Under the pieces are notes generated by a model. It worked only from the letters and a program-made list of their open reading frames with translations. It was not told the origin of the DNA and ran no database searches. Source: Octopus sinensis (Eukaryota). From it: a stretch of 64,000 bases of DNA. Below, piece after piece: positions 3,241-64,000 of this stretch. The position numbers were made by a program, and so were the translations under genes. The stretch is taken from the NCBI RefSeq assembly GCF_006345805.1, contig NC_043003.1:8742001-8806000 (forward strand). The letters run 5' to 3'. The stretch's first letter is position 1; every line of letters begins with the position of its first letter.

Positions 3241-3304
3241 TATGCTGGGAAACCTTCATGAAGCGTTTGCTCGAAAAAATCGACACCAGCACTTGTTACT
3301 CCTT

Positions 3305-9560: not shown

Positions 9561-10424
9561 ATTTTGGCGTGATTATCACACACACACAAAAAAAATATAG
9601 CGCAGCGTATAACAAAATTTTGTAAATTTTGTGCGTCGTATTTTATGGAAGGGAGAAATCGAATAATTATGAGAGCGGATATCTGAACGCATCAAACAGC
9701 TTCGAATTTTTATGCTTAGCAGACATACGTATGCATTTCATTGTAACTCTGTGCAAATTAGCGCGGTTTTTTGATATTTTTTGTGCAAGACGTATTTCGT
9801 ATAATGGCTTTTGTATATGCGTGTGCATGCGCGCGCGAGCGTGTATGAGAGAGTGAGAGCGAGAAAGTGATAGAGGGAGAAAAGAAGAGAGAGAGACAGA
9901 GAAAAACTAAGAGAGACCGGAGCAAATTGATACGTTATTGTGCGCATATGTTTCGGTATTGTCCTGAAGCTGGGGGAAAGGGGATGGTAATAGAATCGTT
10001 GGTTGAAAGATTGCGTCAGCCACAAACAGCTATTTACGTTAGTCTTTATTAGTTAATTGGTCGGTGCGTGTTTATTTGTTTCTCTAAGCCGACAGCTGCT
10101 AGGAACGACGCAGGGGAGGGGGGATTTGTAGAAGAGAGCAGCAGTATGTAACTATGATGATAGAAATATCGATATTTAGAGACTGTGTAATAGTATTGGT
10201 AAGGCAAAGACAACAAAATACACGGTCAATGCCGATCAGTTTTTGACGTAGTTTTGACGTAGTTTAGAACGGTGATGATTGTGATGATGATGATGATGAT
10301 CATGATAATGATGATGATGATGATGATGATGGTGATGGTGATGATGATGATGATGATGATGGGTGTGATGATGATGATGATGATGATGATGATTACCATC
10401 ATCACAATGATAAACATGATCTCA

Positions 10425-28352: not shown

Positions 28353-28490
28353 GTCGGGTCGTCGGCGACTAAACTGGCAACCCCACCGAGCTTGGTTGGT
28401 TGGTGAGGAGGATCATTGCTGGACACCCTGCGGAACGAAATATAAGATCCGTCAAAAGGACAAAAGAACTCATGAGTAGTCAACGGCCAT
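28353..28490 (+). ncRNA. Unclassified structured RNA-like motif (homologue at 57582-57713)
   Basis: 14-nt identical 5' block plus about two-thirds identity over the 3' ~68 columns, with compensatory pairs; see findings. Confidence 0.55.
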
Positions 28491-28571
28491 CCAACATTAT
28501 GTGCATATGTATATATTGATTTTATTTATATTTTATTTATATTTTAAATTTGATGTATTTAATTTCATACA

Positions 28572-31500
28572 TTGGGGGGAGATGGGGCTCCTTAACCGTG
28601 GTGAAGGCATCACGTCTAGGAGAGGGAAACTGATATAAAACCAGGTGTTTGATTACAGAGAGTCTCCTTAACAGGGCTGTACTATCTGCAAGCCCTGACA
28701 CGTAGGTTAGACTAGACTCTCCAGTTTGTTTGTAGTGGATTGTCTAGGAGATGGAAACCGCTGAAGAAAAAACCTAGGGTGTGTTGTTCTTGGTATTGTG
28801 GCACATATGTGCACCATATTCTTGCTACCATCACTTCCAAAATGTTGACTGGTTCTACACAAGCCTTCAACACTTGAATCAAATCATACGTATGGGTTTT
28901 CTGACAACTGACATTAATTCATTCAGTACTGCACAGGTCCAACTTTCAAAAACAAAAAGTCATCTGACGAGAGAGGGAAAGTGGCAGGGAAAGGTAAAAG
29001 GTATTACTGGAATCCTTTTGCTGGATCTCTATACAATCGGCGACCATTGGATGATGGCCGTTCCGACACAGAACTTGTGAGTAACTGCGTTGTCCGTGTC
29101 CTGCAGTGGTGAGAAAGCAGTTCTATTGAGACACAGCACTGTTTTCCCCAACAAAGCGAGGGGCGAGATAACGGAGCCCTAAACATTACTTACCTTAAAT
29201 TTGTTTGCCCGCAGTCAGTAACGCAGTCGAAAGATGAAGAATCTAAGAATATTAACCTTGGTTCTTGAAATGTGCGCATTCTCCAAGACAGCCACGCAGG
29301 ACAGAACGAAAAGCAGCACTGGTTGCTCTTGAACTAAAGAAATACAACACTGACATAGCTGCTCTCAGTGAAACTCGTCTTGCAGAATCATCACAGTTAG
29401 AAGAAAGTAAATGAGGATACGTATTTTTCTGGCGTGTAAGAAATGAGGACGAGCCGTGACACTCTGGTGTTGGTTTTGCCATCAAGACTGAAATAGCTAA
29501 ATTCCTTCTTTCTCTACTCAAAGGTATTTCTGATCGCATCATGACACTAACGTTGGAACTTGATCAAAACACTCGTGCTACGCTTGTCAGTTTCTATGCT
29601 CCAACCATGGTCAGCACTAAGTAGAAAAAGGATGAATTTTACAACCAACTCTGTGATGTCATCTCAAGTGGTCACCATAGGGATAAACTTATCCTTATGG
29701 GTAACTTCAACGGTTGTGTTGGTACTGACTATTAGGCATGGTGAAGGTCGAATGAACTCCAGAGGTCTGCGTGTACTTTCCATCTGCAGGGAATTCAGTC
29801 TAAGCATCACAAATACCTTTTTCCAACAGCGAGATTGTTGCTAGACGACCTGGTTGCATCCTAGATCTAAGGATTGATATCTCATAGTCTATGTTATCAC
29901 TAAGAACCGAGATATTAGGGACTTTAACATTACACGTTCCTTTCATAACAACCTGCTATCTCTCTGACCATTCTCTTCGTAGTAAGTCTACGTTCTATCT
30001 GAAACACACAAGACTGCAACAGTCATCAGTGCCTAAGCATATTAATGTTCTGCCTTTGAAAACTGCTGAAAAGCAGGCTGAGCTTCTCTATCAGGTTGGA
30101 CACTGCACTCAACACTGTTGATATCAGTGATGACATAGAATCATCTTGGAAGGCTCTGCATGATACAAGGCACTCTGCCCTTGCAAAAGTTTTAGGATTT
30201 CCTGTTTGTAAACATCAAGATTGGTTCATGATAACAATACAAATGTCCAGCTGTTGATAGATAAAATGCACAGCTCTCATAAAACATGGATAAATGATAA
30301 AAGCTTATCCAGAAGAGAGAATGCTCATAAGATATGCAGAGGCCAAGTCCAACGTACTCTGAGACATAAAGAAGGCTTGATGGTCATCCAAGGCTACTGA
30401 ACTGCATGAAGCTGCAAACAGGATTCTAAAGCCTTCTGTGATGTTCTTCAGGAAAGAGTTTGGTTATCAAGAGTATGGTGTTAATTCTATTTTTTCATCC
30501 ATTAGAAAGACACTGTTGACTGACAAATCTGACATCCTGAAACGATGGAAATATCACTTTGAAGCTGTGTTGAACTCCACTTCAATCACTAATACCAGAA
30601 TTGTGTTTGAAGCCAACCTTCCTGAAAGTGGTAAGCTCTTTTGATAAAGCACCTGGCAGGGATGCTGTCTCTCCTGAAATCTACAAACATGGTGGAGAGA
30701 AACATTCCATGAAATTGCATGACCTCTTTATAAATATTTGGATGGTAGACCGTGTACCACTGGACATCAAGGATGTCTCAATTCAACATCTTTATAAGAG
30801 CAAAGGAAACAGAAGTGTCTGTGATAATCATCGTGGGATATTGCTTCTGTCTATTGCTGGTAAGATTTTTGCTCGATTCATTTTTGACAGGATCATCAAA
30901 CACGTTGTAAAATGATATCTATCCAAAATCACAGTGCGGATTTCGCTCTGTTCATGGCACTTCCGACATGATCTTTTCCCTTGGTCAGGCCATAGAGAAG
31001 ATACGTGAGAAAAATCAAGAGTTGTTCTTGATATTCGTTGACCTTACTAAGACCTTCGACACTGTTAACCGGCAAGCATTATGGAAAGTTCTGAAAAAGC
31101 TTGGTATACCCGACAAGTTGTTGAATGTTATCTATTTTCATGATAGAACGAAGGCTACAGTCATGTCCGATAGGGAATCTTCAGCGTCCTTCGCTGTTAC
31201 AAACGGCACAAAGTAAGGTTGTGTTATGGCCCCTGTTTTGTTTGCACTGTTCTTTTCAGTGCTGCTGAGGAATGTTTTTGGTGCCATACATAGTGGTGTC
31301 AAATTCCAGTTTCGAACAGATGGTGGACTATTCAATCATCAGCGTTTCAAAGCCAGAACACTGCTACGCACCAGTATCTACTTTTAGCAGATGCTCGAGT
31401 GGTTTTCTGCTACATGTATGACTCAGAATTATGGATATCCTATAGACGACGCATTAGCCAACTAGACATCTTGCACAAAAGCTGTCTCAGGACAATTTGC

Positions 31501-32300
31501 GGTTATTCACGAAAAGACAGAGTTTCTAATGCTGGCCTGTTTAGCAAATGTAAGATAGGTGGAATCGAGAGCTTTGTTATGCAACGCAATTGCGTTGGGC
31601 TGGCCATGTCGTCGGAATGACTGACGAAAGAATACTCAAAGTTCTCATGTACGGCCAGAATGATTGTCGGTCATAGCTCAGATATAAGGAGAAGCGAGCT
31701 GGCAGAAACGTTAGCACGCCCGGGTGAAATGCTTAGTAGTATTTCGTCTGCCGTTACCCTCTGAGTTCAAATTCCGCCAAGGTCCACTATGCCTTTCATT
31801 CTTTCGGGGTCGATTAAATAAGTACCAGTTACGCACTGGGGTCGATGTAATCGACTTAATCCGTTTGTCTGTCCTTGTTTGTCCCCTCTATGTTTAGCCC
31901 CTTGTGGGCAATAAAGAAATAGGTATTTCGTCTGTCCTTGTTTGTTCCCTCTATGTTTAGCCCCATGTGGGCAATAAAGAAATACGATATAAGGGGAAGC
32001 TGATGAGGAACCTCTCGACAGTGAAGATAGCTCACAATACTTTCGAGGGAACGGCTTTGGAGCGAGCAAAATGGAGATCGTATTAAAAACTTTGTTGCAA
32101 CCAGCATTAACAGGCTTCGGGGTACAAGGCAAACGAGAGAAGCACCTGCAAATATATGACCTGCACTGACCTGTAACCCTCATTCATACTTGCAGCACGT
32201 GGGCGTCATTGCAAATCGTTGGCGGGACTTAAATGTCACATTCGACATAAGCATTATAACTGACAGGTGGTCAGAACCTCATATGTTTAAACCTACAAGA
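28572..32300 (+). mobile_element. RTE-clade LINE, near full length, decayed (APE endonuclease + RT + one C2H2 finger)
   Basis: From about 29240: LGSWNVR..DIAALSETRL..SGVGFAI..YAPT..LMGNFN (APE); KAPGRD..NHRGILLLSIAGKIF..QCGFR..FVDLTKTFDTVNR..GCVMAPVLF (RT). After the SINE at 31696-31985: ..GRHCKSLAGLKCHIRHKH. Many stops and frameshifts; YADD region deleted near 31380. Confidence 0.93.
31696..31985 (+). mobile_element. SINE family A inserted in the RTE
   Basis: 15-bp TSD GATATAAGG(A/G)GAAGC at 31681-31695 and 31986-32000. Confidence 0.9.
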
Positions 32301-32341
32301 GAATCCATTATATATATATATATATTATATATATATACATA

Positions 32342-57292: not shown

Positions 57293-57524
<232 letters not shown>

Positions 57525-57914
57525 CCGCCCTCCCATCCCCACCACCTCTTCCCCGAGCGAGGAAATTTCTTTTTTCTTTCGGTCGGGTCGTCGGCATCCT
57601 CGCAGAGCTTCCTCTGGTAGAAGGGTGTATGTTTCTTGCTATTTTGACACCCTAGAGGAAGAAAAACAAGACCTGTATAAAGGCTAATGAACTCTTACGG
57701 GGCAACGGCCACCAAAATAGCATATATCTAGGGGGCAGAAGCAATCATAACGCTTGAACACCCCTTCTTGGAGACGGAAACTCCAAAACTTATACCAGGA
57801 TTACAGGAATCCTATATCCTAGGGTAGATATCCTGTCAGTGATGGTGCCACGGAGAGAAAATACTGGTGGTTGTGCAACCTACAATTCACTAACCCTCAT
57901 CGTGATTGCTGAAA

Positions 57915-58426
57915 TCTATATATATAAAACTGTAGTTGTGTGAGTGTCTGTCCCCTTCGGTTTAGATTCCTAACTACTCCCACATTTTGCGATGCAGTTT
58001 AACCAAATTCGGGTATCTTATAGTCGTGATTCATATCGAGCCCGTCTGAGTATTAGCGCGCGTCTACGATGAGTCTACGATTTTAAAATAATTTAACATC
58101 ATTTTTTATTCCATTTTAATGCATAATTTTTCGTGTGTCGATGGCGACGGAGTTGGCGTCCATGGTCACACCTGCACCTGTTTGCTTCTCCCCCTTCTTC
58201 CCTCCCTCGTGAAGCTGTGGGGAAGGGAGTGTAAGGAAATCAACGTCGTAAAGCGTTGTCAAGGAGACCAGCGTTCTTTTAGAACAACGACTTCATGGCT
58301 TGAAGACACCAAAACAGAAATGGCTAAGAAAGTCCGAATTGGCATCTATAAGGGAAGTAACTCTCTAAAAATGCTTATATAGTTATTTCCCTTACAAACC
58401 CGAGCAACGCCGGGCGATACTGCTAG
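57915..58426 (+). mobile_element. Non-autonomous Helitron with an extra internal segment
   Basis: A^TC...CTAG^T; hairpin CCCGAGCAACGCCGGG; about 58130-58345 is absent from the 7720 copy. Confidence 0.88.
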
Positions 58427-59403
58427 TATCAAATAAAAATAGAAATAAGAAAGGCGTGAAGGGGGCTGGAACCCCTTTGAATGTCTCTGCTCGTCGGGTG
58501 TCACACGGGTGAGCAGCGTGGGCCCAGTCGCCATCAAGTAACTGCTAAAAGAAGATGAACAAAAGAAATGAATGTGGTTGTAATGGAGTGCTACTTTTTG
58601 GGTAACCTGAGAAATGATAATGAAGTACCCACTAGGAGATATAGGAAAAGAATGCACAGGCCATGGAGCGACAGGGGCCTATTTGAATTAAGTGAACGAA
58701 ATGTGTGTGATCAAACTAGAGCCATCAGAAAGAATGAATGGTTATCTCTCGTTGGACTCGAAAGCATTAAGAGACGGGTGCTTAGGGATAGTAAGACTAG
58801 CGGAGAACGGAAGGATGAGGAAGTGAAACTATGGCAGCAGAGTTGAAGGAAGAAAATGAGCATGAGGCTGAGATTATTGATCAGGAAAGCGAAGAGAGAA
58901 CCGAGGAGCAAATATCCATTCTAAATGAAATCATTGATATTTGGATCTCTGGTGAATAGAGCCTCCCTACAGGGTTTAAAAAATAGACAGAAGAAACTCA
59001 ATGAATGGGTCAGGAAGAAAAATGATATCATTGGTGATATCAGAACTGACAACAACACAGACACCAGCAATCTGATGAATGCAATATCTCGATCTTTATA
59101 GCCCGGAAGTTAAGTTTGAAAGCCAAAGGTAAATGTCAACAGAACCTGAAGGAACCATGGTGGAAAAGGAGAATAACGCAATATATTAACGAGACCAGAA
59201 AACATATTGATATTCTGGAACGGTAAAAGAGAAATGAAGCTCAGCGGAAGAAATATGTTGAGCTAGAGAGGAAGTATGGCGTGAAGAGAAAGGGAATCAA
59301 TGTTATGATTGAGGAATTGAAAGCTAAAGAGCATAAACTAAAGAGATATGAACAGAGAATTGAGCAGTTAAGATTAAGCAGACTTTTCGAACAAAATCAG
59401 AAA

Positions 59404-59814
59404 TAGGCGCAGGAGTGGCTGTGTGGTAAGTAGCTTGTCTACCAACCACATGGTTCCAGGTTCAGTCCCACTGCGTGGCACCTTGTGTAAGTATCTTCTA
59501 CTATAGCCTCGGGCCGACCAAAGCCTTGTGAGTGGATTTGGTAGACGGAAACTGAAAGAAGCCCGTCGTATATATGTATATATATATATATGCGTGTGTG
59601 TGTTTGTGTGTCTGTGTTTGTCCCCTAGCATTGCTTGACAACCGATGCTGGTGTGTTTATGTCCCCGTTACTTAGCGGTTCGGAAATAGAGACCGATAGA
59701 ATAAGTACTGGGCTTACAAAAGAATAAGTCCCGGGGTCGAGTTGCTCGATTAAAGGTGGTGCTCCAGCATGGCCGTAGTCAAATGACTGAAACAAGTAGA
59801 AAGAGAAGAAAGAG
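59404..59814 (+). mobile_element. Full-length SINE family B with ~50-bp target duplication
   Basis: Flanking direct repeat at 59354-59403 and 59815-59862. Confidence 0.92.
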
Positions 59815-60239
59815 AGAGAATTGAGCAGTTAAGATTAAGCACTTTTCGAACAAAATCAGAAACGAGTCTATTAGGAACTGGATGGGAAATAAAAAGGTGA
59901 AAAAACTGTGCCGGATGCTCAAGAAAGTAAGAGATTCTGGTCTAACATATGGTCTCAGGAGAAACTACAAGAAACTGAAGCAGACTTGTTAAAGACACTC
60001 AAAGAGGAGAGTGGAGAGTATCAGCAGGAGGATTTGAGAATAACCTAGGAGATTATTGGAGATCAGTGCAAGAGAATTCCTAATTGGAAAGCGCCTGGCC
60101 CAGATGGAGTTCAGGGCTGTTGGTTTAAAAACTTGACAGCCCTCCACAGGAGAACTGCAAGATAGATGGACGAAATACTGAGTAGTGACATCCGAGTACC
60201 GGCCTGGATGACAAAAGGAAGAACGGTACTATGACAGAA

Positions 60240-61882
60240 GGCGGCGAGCTGGCAGAAGCGTTAGCACGCCGGGCGAAATGCTTTGCGGTATTTCGTCTGC
60301 CGTTACGTTGTGAGTTCAAATTCCGCCGAGGTCGACTTTGCCTTTCATCCTTTCGGGGTCGGTAAATTAAGCACCAGTTACGCACTGGGGTCGATGTAAT
60401 CGACTTAATACCTATGTCTGTCCTTGTTTGTCCCCTCTATGTTTAGCCCCTTGTGGGTAATAAAGAAATAGGTTTAAAAACTTGACAGCCCTCCACAGGA
60501 GAACTGCAAGATAGATGGACGAAATACTGAGTAGTGACATCCGAGTACCGGCCTGGATGACAAAAGGAAGAATGGTACTATGACAGAAGGATCCAAAGAA
60601 AGAGAAAGCGGTAAGAAATTTCCGACCAATATCTTGTTTGCCACTGATGTGTAAACTGATGACTGGCATCATATCAAACAACATTTATAAATACCTAGAA
60701 GATAACGACCTGCTACTAGTGGAACAAGAAAGGTGTAGACGTAAGAGTAGAGGAACGAAGGATCAATTACTAATCGATAAGACTATCCTGGCTTATTGCA
60801 AGAATAGACACAAAACGAGGCAGCAAGCTGGCAGAATCGTTAGCACGTCGTGAGAAATGCTTAGTAGTATTTCGTCTGCCGTTACGTTCTGAGTTCAAAT
60901 TCCACCGAGGTCGACTTTGCCTTTCATCCTTTCGGGATCGATAAATTAAGTACCAGTTACGCACTGGGGTCGATATAATCGACTTTATTCCCTTTGTCTG
61001 TCCTTGTTTGTCCCCTCCGTCTTTAGCCCCTTGTAGGTAGTAAAGAAATAGGTATTTCGCCCGCCGCTACGTTCTAGTTCAAATTCCGCCGAGGTCGACT
61101 TTGCCTTTCATCCTTTCGGGGTCGGTAAATTAAGCACCAGTTACGCACTGGGGTCGATGTAATCGACTTAATACCTATGTTTGTCCCCTCTATGTTTAGC
61201 CCCTCTTGGGTAATAAAGAAATAGGTACTATGACAGAAGGACCCAAAGAAAGGGAAAGCGGTTAGAAATTTCCGACCAATATCTTGTTTGCCTCTGATGT
61301 GGAAACTGATGACTGGCATCATATCAAACAACATTATAAATACCTAGAAGACAACGACCTGCTACTAGTGGAACAAGAAAGGTGTAGACGTAAGAGTAGA
61401 GGAACGAAGGATCAATTACTAATCGATAAGACTATCCTGGCTTATTGCAAGAATAGACACAAAACGAGGCAGCAAGCTGGCAGAATCGTTAGCACGTCGG
61501 GCGAAATGCTTAGTAGTATTTCGTCTGCCGTTACGTTCTGAGTTCAAATTCCACCGAGGTCGACTTTGCCTTTCATCCTTTCGGCGTCGATAAATTAAGT
61601 ACCAGTTACGCACTGGGGTCGATATAATCGACTTTATTCCCTTTGTCTGTCCTTGTTTGTCCCCTCCGTGTTTAGCCCCTTGTGGGTAGTAAAGAAATAG
61701 GTATTTCGCCCGCCGCTACGTTCTGAGTTCAAATTCCGCCGAGGTTGACTTTGCCTTTCGTCCTTTCGGGGTCGATAAATTAAGTACCAGTTACGCACTG
61801 GGGTCGATGTAATCGACTTAATCCGTTTGTCTGTCATTGTTTGTCCCCTCTATGTTTAGCCCCTTGTGGGTAGTAAAAGAAT
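60240..61882 (+). mobile_element. Three SINE family A insertions (60240-60470, 60816-61223, 61465-61882) with duplicated host DNA
   Basis: 120-bp repeat at 60122-60241 / 60471-60590; 650-bp-period repeat starting at 60574 and 61224; 16-bp TSD AAGAATAGACACAAAA. Confidence 0.92.
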
Positions 61883-62411
61883 AAGAATAGACACAAAAAT
61901 TTGGCGATGGCGTGGGTGGACTACAGGAAAGCATATGACATGGTCCCTAGGAAAAAAACATTAGGGACGATAAAAGAGCAAAACACTGAGAGAGAGAGAG
62001 AGAAAGAGAGAGAGTGTGTGTGTGTGTGTGGTGTGTGTGTGTGTGTGTGTGTGTTTGCGCGCGCGCGTGTATGATAGTAATTCTTTCTACTCACCAACAG
62101 ATGTCTCTTCTTTCATAACCTACATTCATCGCCTTACTTGCCATGTCATTTATATTTCTGTTTTGCTTGTCTTGGTTCAGGTTTGTTACTGTCACGAGCG
62201 AATGGGTTCTATAAATACCTACCCCCATATCTGTTTCTAAGGACATACCTGTACTGAATCTCAGTACTGTTAATGTCAGAGCTTAGCATATTACACATCT
62301 GCTCATACATACATTTATATGCACCCTTCTCTTTTCTATATATATATATTTATGTATGCATTGGTATATATATATATATCTCAACTCTAACTCACTCAGA
62401 AATATATATAG

Positions 62412-62890: not shown

Positions 62891-63870
62891 TGGGTTGGCA
62901 AGAAACTAATTTCGTTTTTCGCAGAGTTACGATTTTTTTAATAGCTTTTCTCAACGTTGTGATTTGTTTTCTTTTAACTTTTGATAGCCGTTACTTTAAG
63001 CTTACTTTAGAAGCAAATTGCCCGTAATTTTATTTACAGCTATTAGTTTAGTATCAATTTTAACATGGAGTGCAAACACAAACATTTTCACCATATTTTG
63101 CTTCTTTATTTCCGTAAATGCAAGAAAGCTGCTGAGGCTCGCAAAGAGATATGTGAAATTTATGATATTGATTGCTTAAGAGAAAGCACATGTCAGAAAT
63201 AGTTTTAAAAATTCCGTTCTGGGGATTTTTCACTCAAAGATGACCAACGTTCTGGTCGCCTTACTAAAGTTGATGATGGCCGAATCAAAGCCATAATTTG
63301 GATCTGATTGTCATTTAACTGTGCGAGAGCTAGAGCTTGCAGAGAGGTTAAATGTATCACACACAACAATTGAAAACCACTTAAAATGTCTTGGACTCGT
63401 TAAGAAGCTCAATATTTGGGTGCCACATAAATTGAAAGAGATTCACTTAACACAACGTATCAATATTTGCGATATGTATCTCAAATGCAATGAAATCGAC
63501 CTTTGTTTTGAAATGAATCATCACTGGTGAGGAAGAATGGATTGTCTAAAATAACATTAATCGAAAACGATCATGGTCCAATCGTAATAAACCAGCACAA
63601 ACCTCATCGAAAGTTGAATTGCATAAAAAGGGTCATGTTGTCAGTTTGGTTGGATTACAAAGGGGTTGTGTATTTTGCGCTTTTCTAAGGAACCAAACAA
63701 TCAATTGTGATGTTTACTCTCCACAACTAATGAAACTAGAAGAAGCAATCAAAGAAAAATGGCCAGAATTGGCAAATCGTAAAGGAATCGTGTTCTGCTA
63801 TGACAACGCATCATACTACCAATTATTTCGAAGATTGCAAAATTCTTTGAATGGTAAAACATTTCCAACT
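62889..63870 (+). mobile_element. Mariner DNA transposon, decayed transposase (Hsmar1/cecropia-like)
   Basis: Left TIR ATTGGGTTGGCAAGAAACTAATTTCGTTTTT within (TA)n; ATG at 63065; FRSGDFSLKDDQRSGR, WVPHKL, ITG(E)E.WI, VMLSVW, (Y)DNA motifs; YSPDL region deleted; no right TIR seen. Confidence 0.92.
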
Positions 63871-64000
63871 ACTTGTTGTTGCTGATATACCGATATACCA
63901 ATACCAAACCACGACACTGCATGACCTTCGTCGACCAATCGCAATCCACCCGAACAATTCCTTTCAAATAACAAAAACAGTTTCTTTCAAATTCAAAATG

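What the first reader, a model, noticed from the sequence alone, without database searches (positions are those of the whole stretch)
57582..57714. Unclassified ~135-nt structured RNA motif with covariation, shared by an R4/Dong 5' UTR and a site upstream of an RTE
Seen: GTCGGGTCGTCGGC is identical at 28353-28366 and 57582-57595. The 3' parts (28422-28489 vs 57646-57711) align at about 47 of 68 columns by hand (GACACCCT...GAAA.A.AAGA...AAAGG...GAACTC...CAACGGCCA), while the middle is unrelated. Both copies can form an outer helix GGTCGTCG/CAACGGCC (7 of 8 pairs, same C-A mismatch). Both also have a hairpin with a 13-nt purine-rich loop whose stem changes compensatorily: GCGGA/TCCGT vs AGAGG/CCTGT (G-C to A-T and A-T to G-C; one mismatch in the second). 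The outer helix is followed by ACCA (57711) or ATCCA (28489), like a tRNA 3' end. Established: R2, R4 and RTE 5' UTRs can carry self-cleaving HDV-like or twister ribozymes. I cannot fit this shared part to hammerhead, HDV, twister, pistol or hatchet. Inference: a possibly undescribed functional RNA module (ribozyme, translation-initiation or tRNA-like element) exchanged between retrotransposon 5' ends.
Basis: partly seen in the sequence, partly recalled or inferred. Interest (0 to 1): 0.8.

Follow-up and report, generated by a model that had tools for sequence, protein, structure and literature searches.

The report
Shared octopus LINE 5'UTR segment
The two similar ~140-base stretches are real relatives, but they are best read as a piece of retrotransposon 5' untranslated region shared by a Dong-type and an RTE-type element in octopus, with only weak evidence for a special RNA fold and none for a ribozyme.

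Summary
The similarity is real: c1 (28353-28494) and c2 (57582-57714) match far above chance. A third full copy lies in Octopus bimaculoides, at the same place in the same Dong-like LINE family as c2. That copy shows that c2 has a 12-nt deletion. It also shows that the copies are colinear over their whole length, not only at the ends; the middle is the most diverged part.

In the Dong family the segment is internal. A conserved 60-125-nt leader separates it from the (TAA)n target, and the ORF starts about 175 nt downstream. About 50 nt after the segment, c1, c2 and c3 all carry a block, TCTAGGAGAnGGAAAC...AAACC, that is typical of RTE 5'UTRs. The shared unit is therefore a cassette of at least 250 nt that links RTE and Dong 5'UTRs.

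Evidence for RNA structure is weak. Folding z-scores are -0.4 to -2.0. RNAalifold gives five local hairpins with no net covariation bonus.

Two hairpins do show compensatory changes around conserved loops.

Nothing in Rfam, ARAGORN or the motif tests I ran for HDV-like, twister and hammerhead ribozymes fits. The conserved, co-transposed leader argues against 5' self-cleavage at the segment's start.

The parts
57582..57714 (+). c2: the flagged segment, inside the 5'UTR of a Dong-like (R4-clade) LINE; it carries a 12-nt deletion relative to c1 and c3
28353..28494 (+). c1: second copy of the segment, 68% identical to c2 and 69% to c3; the sequence upstream of it is unrelated to the Dong leader
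57400..57522 (+). (TAA)n microsatellite, the insertion target of the Dong-like element
   Evidence: the same arrangement is seen in L002, L006 and L007
57523..57581 (+). Dong-family leader. It is conserved with O. bimaculoides (CCCCACCACCTCT...CCCCG) and ends in a pyrimidine tract
   Evidence: z=11.1
57766..57805 (+). RTE-type 5'UTR block (TCTTGGAGACGGAAAC...ATACCAGGATTACAG), 52 nt after c2
57654..57676 (+). Hairpin H4 in c2: AGAGG, a 13-nt purine-rich loop, then CCTGT (one G-G mismatch)
28430..28452 (+). Hairpin H4 in c1: GCGGA, loop ACGAAATATAAGA, then TCCGT. Two pairs are changed on both sides relative to c2 and c3
57603..57616 (+). Hairpin H2 in c2: CAGAG, loop CTTC, then CTCTG. In c1 it is CCGAG-CTTG-GTTGG at 28386-28399
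57622..57653 (+). Hairpin H3 in c2: AGGGTGT...ACACCCT. It is intact in c2 and c3 and degraded in c1
58559..60850 (+). Frameshifted remains of the Dong-like ORF (N-terminal region through the start of the RT domain), 73-87% identical in DNA to the O. bimaculoides element in L002
28566..28741 (+). RTE 5'UTR unit B, downstream of c1. It matches the RTE 5'UTRs L004 and L003, and more weakly the Dong block
28742..32309 (+). Decayed RTE body: a second copy of the block, the APE+RT ORF from about 29180, and a 3' end followed by (AT)n. It is interrupted by a SINE at 31693-31983

Best explanation
The flagged sequence is a conserved stretch of LINE 5' untranslated region, not a free-standing RNA gene or ribozyme.

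In octopus it belongs to a Dong-like (R4-clade) retrotransposon that targets (TAA)n. There it lies between a family-specific leader and the ORF start. It travels as part of a larger cassette of at least 250 nt: the segment, about 50 nt of spacer, then an RTE-type block TCTAGGAGAnGGAAAC...AAACC. The same cassette order appears at 28.4 kb in front of a decayed RTE.

The two LINE clades therefore share 5'UTR material. The sharing is shown. The route is inferred: most likely recombination or template switching between LINE RNAs, probably with the RTE lineage as donor, because the block also occurs in RTEs of other taxa.

How it works is inferred and uncertain. It probably serves the element's own 5'UTR. 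It could be part of the internal promoter that a LINE landing in untranscribed microsatellite needs. It could also act in the leader RNA as two or three independent stem-loops (H2, H3, H4 with its conserved purine-rich loop) that bind protein or help translation. It does not act by self-cleavage at its 5' edge.
For: - Homology of c1, c2 and c3: z=12.8 and 16.6; nhmmer E=1e-33 to 1e-48; the covariance model finds all three.
- c2's element and the O. bimaculoides element are one family, 73-87% identical over 57383-61947. Both follow a (TAA)n/(TAG)n run.
- Relatives have an RT domain but no N-terminal APE domain.
- An ORF start lies at L002:3504, 175 nt after the segment.
- The leader is conserved between c2 and c3 (z=11.1).
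- The block downstream of c1 is RTE 5'UTR (z=17.5 against L004) and also matches the Dong block (z=7.1 against c3, 0 of 1000 shuffles). The order and spacing of segment and block are the same in c1, c2 and c3.
- The RTE body aligns to RTE contigs L003 and L004 over 28743-31676.
- A full-length RTE and a full-length Dong are both reported for O. bimaculoides, and the O. vulgaris element RTE-2_OV has a 5'UTR of about 600 nt (PMC9115989).
- Hairpins H2 and H4 each have two pairs changed on both sides, around conserved loops.
Against: - Only three full copies could be collected, so neither selection on structure nor the direction of transfer can be tested properly.
- c1 could be an orphan fragment that lies next to the RTE by accident. 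An AT-rich low-complexity stretch (28496-28572) separates them, and (TA)n runs are very common in this window (103 runs).
- No other copy of this RTE family was available to show that its 5' end carries the segment.
- RTE relatives from other taxa (L003, L004) lack the segment.
- Promoter activity was not testable with these tools.
Confidence: 0.55

Rival explanations
1. c1 is a neutrally decaying orphan piece of a Dong-type or RTE-type 5'UTR. The apparent compensatory changes are chance, helped by transitions and CpG decay. On this view nothing in the segment is under structural constraint.
For: - Identity between c1 and c2/c3 is 68-69%, typical of old repeat copies.
- Both elements are frameshifted and interrupted.
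- Folding z-scores are unremarkable, and the antisense strand of c3 scores the same (-2.00).
- The RNAalifold covariation term is +1.01, that is, no bonus.
- All changes on both sides in H4 are transitions, and one involves paired CpGs.
- Shuffle controls are reached 16-38 times in 500.
Against: - In H4 and H2 the loops are more conserved than the stems while pairing is kept.
- c3 and L009 repair the single mismatch of c2's H4.
- CpG depletion in the window is mild (observed/expected 0.90).
- Sliding the partner columns drops pairing from 86-89% to 19-63%.
Confidence: 0.25
2. The segment is a discrete functional RNA module: an undescribed self-cleaving ribozyme, a tRNA-like element or an IRES-like translation element, exchanged between LINE 5' ends.
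For: - There is no match to any known family, so it would be new.
- c1's similarity to the Dong copies starts exactly at G of GTCGG.
- It occupies the 5'UTR, where RTE and R2-group elements are known to carry ribozymes. One example is the twister variants at the 5' end of Perere-3 (PMC8501958).
- Some hairpin covariation is present.
Against: - Full-length Dong copies retain a conserved leader upstream of the segment. In Perere-3, by contrast, the target-site duplications abut the cleavage site.
- An HDV-like descriptor that recovers the human CPEB3 ribozyme gives no solution shared by c1, c2 and c3.
- Twister, hammerhead and tRNA boxes are absent; CTAATGA replaces CTGANGA.
- The outer helix is not kept in c3 (5 of 8 pairs), and CCA is not conserved.
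- c2 lacks 12 nt that form a hairpin in c1 and c3.
Confidence: 0.08
3. The conservation is purely at the DNA level: transcription-factor sites of an internal promoter. The RNA hairpins are incidental.
For: - Dong copies sit in (TAA)n microsatellite, so they need their own promoter.
- The segment lies within the first ~270 nt of the element.
- Replacement of 5'UTRs to gain promoters is well known for mammalian L1 (my own knowledge, not checked here).
Against: - Several G-U pairs exist only on the sense strand.
- Stems vary while pairing is kept.
Confidence: 0.12

Closest known systems
Dong / R4-clade site-specific LINEs (Bombyx Dong inserts in TAA repeats; a Dong element is reported in the O. 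bimaculoides repeat library, PMC9115989)
   Same: All four related elements seen here (c2, L002, L006, L007) begin right after a (TAA)n-type run. Related proteins have an RT domain preceded by a long N-terminal region with no APE domain.
   Different: The restriction-like endonuclease was not verified, because the copies are truncated and Pfam has no hit. The 5'UTR segment itself is seen only in the octopus copies and not in the Dong-like elements L001, L006, L007 and L014.
RTE-clade LINEs and their 5'UTRs (for example octopus RTE-2_OV with a ~600-nt 5'UTR, PMC9115989)
   Same: The element downstream of c1 has a single APE+RT ORF and microsatellite flanks. Its 5'UTR block is shared with RTE contigs L003 and L004.
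   Different: L003 and L004 have a GC-rich nested structure at their 5' end instead of the flagged segment. Whether the octopus RTE family normally starts with the segment is unknown.
5'-terminal self-cleaving ribozymes of non-LTR retrotransposons (HDV-like in R2/RTE; twister variants in Perere-3, PMC8501958)
   Same: Located in a LINE 5'UTR.
   Different: No family-defining fold or conserved core was found. The segment is not at the 5' terminus of the Dong element, and the upstream leader is inherited with the element.
Modular 5'UTR replacement in LINEs (mammalian L1 lineages; my own knowledge)
   Same: Unrelated or distantly related LINE lineages end up with homologous 5'UTR cassettes while their ORFs differ.
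   Different: Here the sharing is between two different clades, APE-type RTE and Dong-type, and rests on one RTE-adjacent copy.

Membership tests
HDV-like self-cleaving ribozyme | Nested double pseudoknot (P1, P1.1, P2, P3, P4) with P3 abutting the 3' strand of P1 and a C in J4/2, conserved among copies | tested here: not met
The best c2 candidate (P1 GCGAGGA/TCCTCGC) keeps only 3 of 7 pairs in c3 on my own reading, and c1 has no counterpart to its 5' strand.
HDV-like self-cleaving ribozyme | Cleavage at the ribozyme's own 5' end, so that retrotransposed copies start at the ribozyme | tested here: not met
   Dong copies c2 and c3 keep a conserved 60-125-nt leader between the (TAA)n run and the segment.
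Any Rfam family (including HDV-like, twister, twister-sister, pistol, hatchet, hammerhead, hairpin, tRNA) | Covariance-model score at or near the family threshold | tested here: not met
   There were 0 hits at gathering score over the whole window. Nothing relevant appeared at E<=10 around either copy or at E<=5 in L002.
Twister ribozyme | Conserved core boxes (loop CCCAAGC, RUAAA, GAGGG, as tabulated in PMC8501958) | tested here: not met
   CCCAAGC is absent from all three copies, and the other boxes are absent or scattered.
Hammerhead ribozyme | CUGANGA and GAAA core around three helices | tested here: not met
   There is no CTGANGA. c2, c3, L008 and L009 have CTAATGA (the G at core position 5 replaced by A), and c1 has a different sequence at that position.
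tRNA or tRNA-like element | Cloverleaf, A and B boxes, acceptor helix followed by a conserved NCCA | tested here: not met
   ARAGORN finds none. There are no A or B boxes. The outer helix is 5 of 8 in c3. CCA is not conserved, and homology continues past it.
Dong/R4-clade LINE 5'UTR | Lies between the (TAA)n target junction and the ORF start of an RT-encoding element that lacks an N-terminal APE domain | tested here: met
   For c2 and c3. The endonuclease type itself was not tested.
RTE-clade LINE 5'UTR | Contiguous with, and co-inherited with, an APE+RT single-ORF element | tested here: inconclusive
   c1 lies 120 nt upstream of sequence that is clearly RTE 5'UTR, in the same order as in the Dong cassette. 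No second copy of this RTE family was available, and L003 and L004 lack the segment.

The most novel reading that the evidence does not exclude
The segment, possibly together with the downstream RTE-type block, is an undescribed functional RNA of cephalopod LINEs. Candidates are a translation-initiation or RNP-assembly element, or a new class of processing ribozyme. On this reading it has moved horizontally between the RTE and Dong clades because it confers an advantage.
Probability: 0.1. Interest if true: 0.75.

Novelty: new variant of a known kind. Interest (0 to 1): 0.3.

Why it matters
If the cassette reading holds, two LINE clades with different endonucleases and different target choice (RTE and Dong) have exchanged 5'UTR material in octopus. 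TE activity in the octopus brain is currently under discussion. Such an exchange would give a handle on what a LINE 5'UTR must provide (a promoter, or leader RNA hairpins), and would supply a marker for tracing recombination between LINE RNAs. As it stands, the finding is a lineage-specific repeat feature with modest evidence for function. It does not open a new class of RNA.

Tried and rejected
- Rfam at the gathering threshold and at permissive E-values: nothing relevant.
- ARAGORN: no tRNA.
- More copies within the window, by blastn-short, nhmmer and a covariance model: none.
- More copies elsewhere. They yielded one full copy (L002) and two partial ones (L008, L009/L010). The 164 kb of O. 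vulgaris sequence (L005, L011, L012) and the Dong-like elements of other taxa (L001, L006, L007, L014) lack the segment.
- A metagenome pattern scan gave one chance match.
- By eye I thought the 5' part of the segment plus c1's upstream flank was homologous to the GC-rich 5' structure of RTE contigs L003 and L004 (GTTGG-TGTC-GGG...TAAAC). A shuffle test showed this is not above chance (z about 0), so I dropped it.
- An HDV-like candidate in c2 (P1 GCGAGGA/TCCTCGC, P2 pyrimidine tract against the purine loop, P3 equal to the 14-mer) looked attractive but is not conserved in c3 or c1 (and my reading).
- A hammerhead reading fails at the core.
- I searched the supplements of PMC9115989 for the octopus RTE/Dong consensus sequences. 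The stored FASTA is truncated and nothing was found.
- Target-site duplications for a c1+RTE unit could not be called, because both flanks are (TA)n.

Full report
**What is at the two sites**

The 14-mer GTCGGGTCGTCGGC is present at 28353 and 57582. A sensitive blastn of either ~170-nt region against the window finds only the other copy. The 14-mer alone is marginal (E=0.03). With lenient scoring, blastn joins 28376-28497 to 57593-57718 at 67.7% identity (E=1e-6). A local alignment of the two segments scores z=12.8 against 300 dinucleotide shuffles, and none of the shuffles reaches it. The similarity is therefore real.

MAFFT shows that the 'unrelated middle' can be aligned if c2 has a 12-nt gap after GTCGGGTCGT. 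By segment, c1 and c2 share 13 of 14 columns in the 5' part, 24 of 43 in the middle and 48 of 69 in the 3' part. Tested alone (c1 against c3), the middle is not above chance (74 of 1000 shuffles). The fair description is colinear throughout, with a fast-evolving middle.

**What the surrounding elements are**

- **Downstream of c2.** There are frameshifted ORF fragments that lead into a reverse transcriptase. A pseudo-protein built from these fragments finds hundreds of RT proteins that lack an N-terminal AP-endonuclease domain. One is from Octopus bimaculoides.
- **The O. bimaculoides locus (L002).** It is 73-87% identical in DNA to 57383-61947. It carries a third full copy of the segment at L002:3183-3329 (nhmmer E=1e-33). 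I call this copy c3.
- **Position within the Dong-like family.** In both c2 and c3 the element begins right after a (TAA)n or (TAG)n run, then has a leader of 60-125 nt, then the segment. The leader is conserved between the two (z=11.1, 0 of 1000 shuffles). In L002 an ORF with an ATG start begins 175 nt after the segment.
- **Relatives in other taxa.** Two more distant relatives (L006, L007) also sit directly after (TAA)n. This target choice, plus the lack of an APE domain, fits the Dong/R4 group. A Dong element is on record for O. bimaculoides (PMC9115989).
- **Downstream of c1.** There is a decayed single-ORF APE+RT element. It aligns over 28743-31676 with two RTE-like contigs, L003 and L004. 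It ends at about 32309 in front of (AT)n and is interrupted by a SINE.

**What c3 changes**

- c3 has the 12 nt (GGCGACTAAACC) that c1 has and c2 lacks, so c2 is a deletion variant.
- c1 aligns to c3 over its full length (z=16.6; 97 of 140 columns identical).
The one pair changed on both sides there is a C-G to T-A change at two CpGs (reading).
- c3 and the partial copy L009 have a perfect ACAGG/CCTGT stem where c2 has AGAGG/CCTGT.
- Homology among c2, c3, L009 and L008 continues past the supposed ACCA end (AAATAGCA...). The CCA itself varies. There is no tRNA-like terminus.

**The shared unit is larger than the segment**

About 50 nt after the segment, c2 and c3 have TCT(T/A)GGAGACGGAAAC...A(T/A)ACCAGGATTACAG. 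In c1 the same block, TCTAGGAGAGGGAAAC...AAAACCAGG...GATTACAG, starts 120 nt after the segment. About 77 of those 120 nt are an AT-rich low-complexity expansion.

- The c1 block region (28566-28741) is clearly RTE 5'UTR: z=17.5 against L004 and 7.7 against L003.
- It also matches the Dong block: z=7.1 against c3, 0 of 1000 shuffles (alignments).
- The block is duplicated in c1, at 28615 and 28744.

The order segment, spacer, RTE-type block therefore occurs both in front of the RTE and inside the Dong 5'UTR. The sequences upstream of the segment are unrelated: the Dong leader against c1's flank gives z about 0.

The simplest reading is a 5'UTR cassette shared between the two clades. The block also occurs in RTEs of other taxa that lack the segment (L003, L004). 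That hints, but does not prove, that the RTE lineage was the donor.

I could not get a second copy of this RTE family. Chance adjacency of c1 and the RTE therefore remains possible.

**RNA structure**

- **Single-sequence folding.** Minimum-free-energy z-scores are -0.41 (c1), -1.67 (c2) and -1.98 (c3). The antisense strands give +1.29, -1.06 and -2.00.
- **RNAalifold on the three copies.** It predicts five local hairpins and no outer helix. The covariation term is +1.01 kcal/mol, which is no bonus. Four of 34 pairs changed on both sides, and eleven pairs are broken in some copy.
86.5% of cells are paired and 3 pairs changed on both sides. This is reached by 16 of 500 column shuffles.
- **The alifold structure.** 89.1% of cells are paired and 4 pairs changed on both sides. 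This is reached by 38 of 500 shuffles.
- **What these numbers are worth.** With three related sequences, and structures derived from them, they are suggestive at most. The tool's own notes warn of this.

The best individual cases are H4 (ACAGG, a 13-nt purine loop, CCTGT) and H2 (CAGAG-CTTN-CTCTG). In both, the loops are more conserved than the stems and two pairs each change on both sides. All the H4 changes are transitions. CpG depletion in the window is mild (0.90).

**Known families**

- Rfam gives nothing at gathering score for the window. It gives nothing relevant at E<=10 around either copy or at E<=5 in L002.
- ARAGORN finds no tRNA.
- My HDV-like descriptor script recovers the human CPEB3 ribozyme, which I used as the control in place of any viral sequence. 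It yields only non-conserved chance candidates here.
- Twister core boxes, as tabulated in PMC8501958, the hammerhead core and the tRNA promoter boxes are all absent.
- A covariance model built from the three copies finds only the known copies in 325.6 kb of window plus fetched loci.

**Why a 5' self-cleaving module is unlikely**

In Perere-3, the target-site duplications abut the ribozyme cleavage site, because the cleaved RNA is what gets copied (PMC8501958). Here, full-length Dong copies carry a conserved leader between the (TAA)n target and the segment. The RNA template therefore still had its leader. A ribozyme that cut at the G of GTCGG would have removed it.

**Conclusion**

The interpretation as a discrete, covarying, possibly catalytic RNA module is not supported by what could be gathered.

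The segment is best described as part of a lineage-specific LINE 5'UTR cassette shared between a Dong-type and an RTE-type element in octopus. It probably contains two or three local hairpins. Its role, in the promoter or in the leader RNA, is untested.

A deep genome-wide alignment, which these tools cannot reach for eukaryotic genomes, is the decisive missing step.

Noticed in passing
L003:53-100, L004:229-275; L007:9745-9800, L006:9835-9885: RTE contigs from other taxa start, right after (AT)n, with a nested GC-rich structure: CGCGCC, then 14 nt ending in GAAAT, then CCCAG-GTTGGTGT-CTGGG, then GGCGCG. Dong-like elements of another taxon have a similar hairpin, CCGG-GTTGGCGT-CCGG, followed by CGGGGG. 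The stems differ while the loop GTTGGYGT is kept. The topology resembles the 5' half of an HDV-like fold, but I could not complete a convincing P2 or J4/2, and Rfam is silent.
   Followed up: partly
window 31693-31983; 60233-61888: A ~240-300-nt tRNA-derived SINE-like repeat (B-box-like GAGTTCAAATTCCGCC) is inserted in the RTE, flanked by the duplicated target AGATATAAGGRGAAG. Five copies (84-90% identical) lie in the Dong RT region. They are interleaved with a tandem duplication of an RT fragment ([18 protein letters not shown]... at 60584, repeated at 61266).
   Followed up: partly
window 28615-28660 and 28744-28790: The RTE 5'UTR block TCTAGGAGAnGGAAAC...AAAACC is present twice, about 128 nt apart. 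The first copy ends like the Dong version (GATTACAG), the second like RTEs of other taxa (GTGTTGTTC). This mosaic pattern would fit recombination at the block.
   Followed up: partly
window 57566-57581 with 57658-57671; L002:3165-3182 with 3270-3283: In Dong copies a pyrimidine tract (TTTCTTTTTTCTTTC) lies just upstream of the segment. It is complementary to the purine-rich loop of hairpin H4 (GGAAGAAAAACAAGA). L008 keeps the T-rich tract although most of the segment is deleted. c1 has no such tract. This could be a loop-leader pseudoknot or mere low complexity.
   Followed up: no
window 57545-57552 with 57864-57874; L002 around 3130 and 3465; L007:9702-9710 with 9873-9881: The leader sequence CCACCACC is complementary to TGGTGGTTGTG, which lies just upstream of the ORF start about 300 nt away. 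In L007 a different pair (GCAACTACC and GGTGGTTGT) occupies comparable positions. This may be long-range 5'UTR pairing in Dong-like elements.
   Followed up: no
window 63297-63882: Remnant of a mariner-type transposase: Pfam Transposase_1 (E=3e-12), preceded by weak HTH matches.
   Followed up: partly
whole window: The window is very rich in (TA)n and other microsatellites (103 perfect (TA) runs of at least 6 units), has 38% GC and has CpG observed/expected 0.90. Its repeats match Octopus bimaculoides at 73-91% identity. The source is therefore probably an octopus or a close relative, though the species was not identified.
   Followed up: partly
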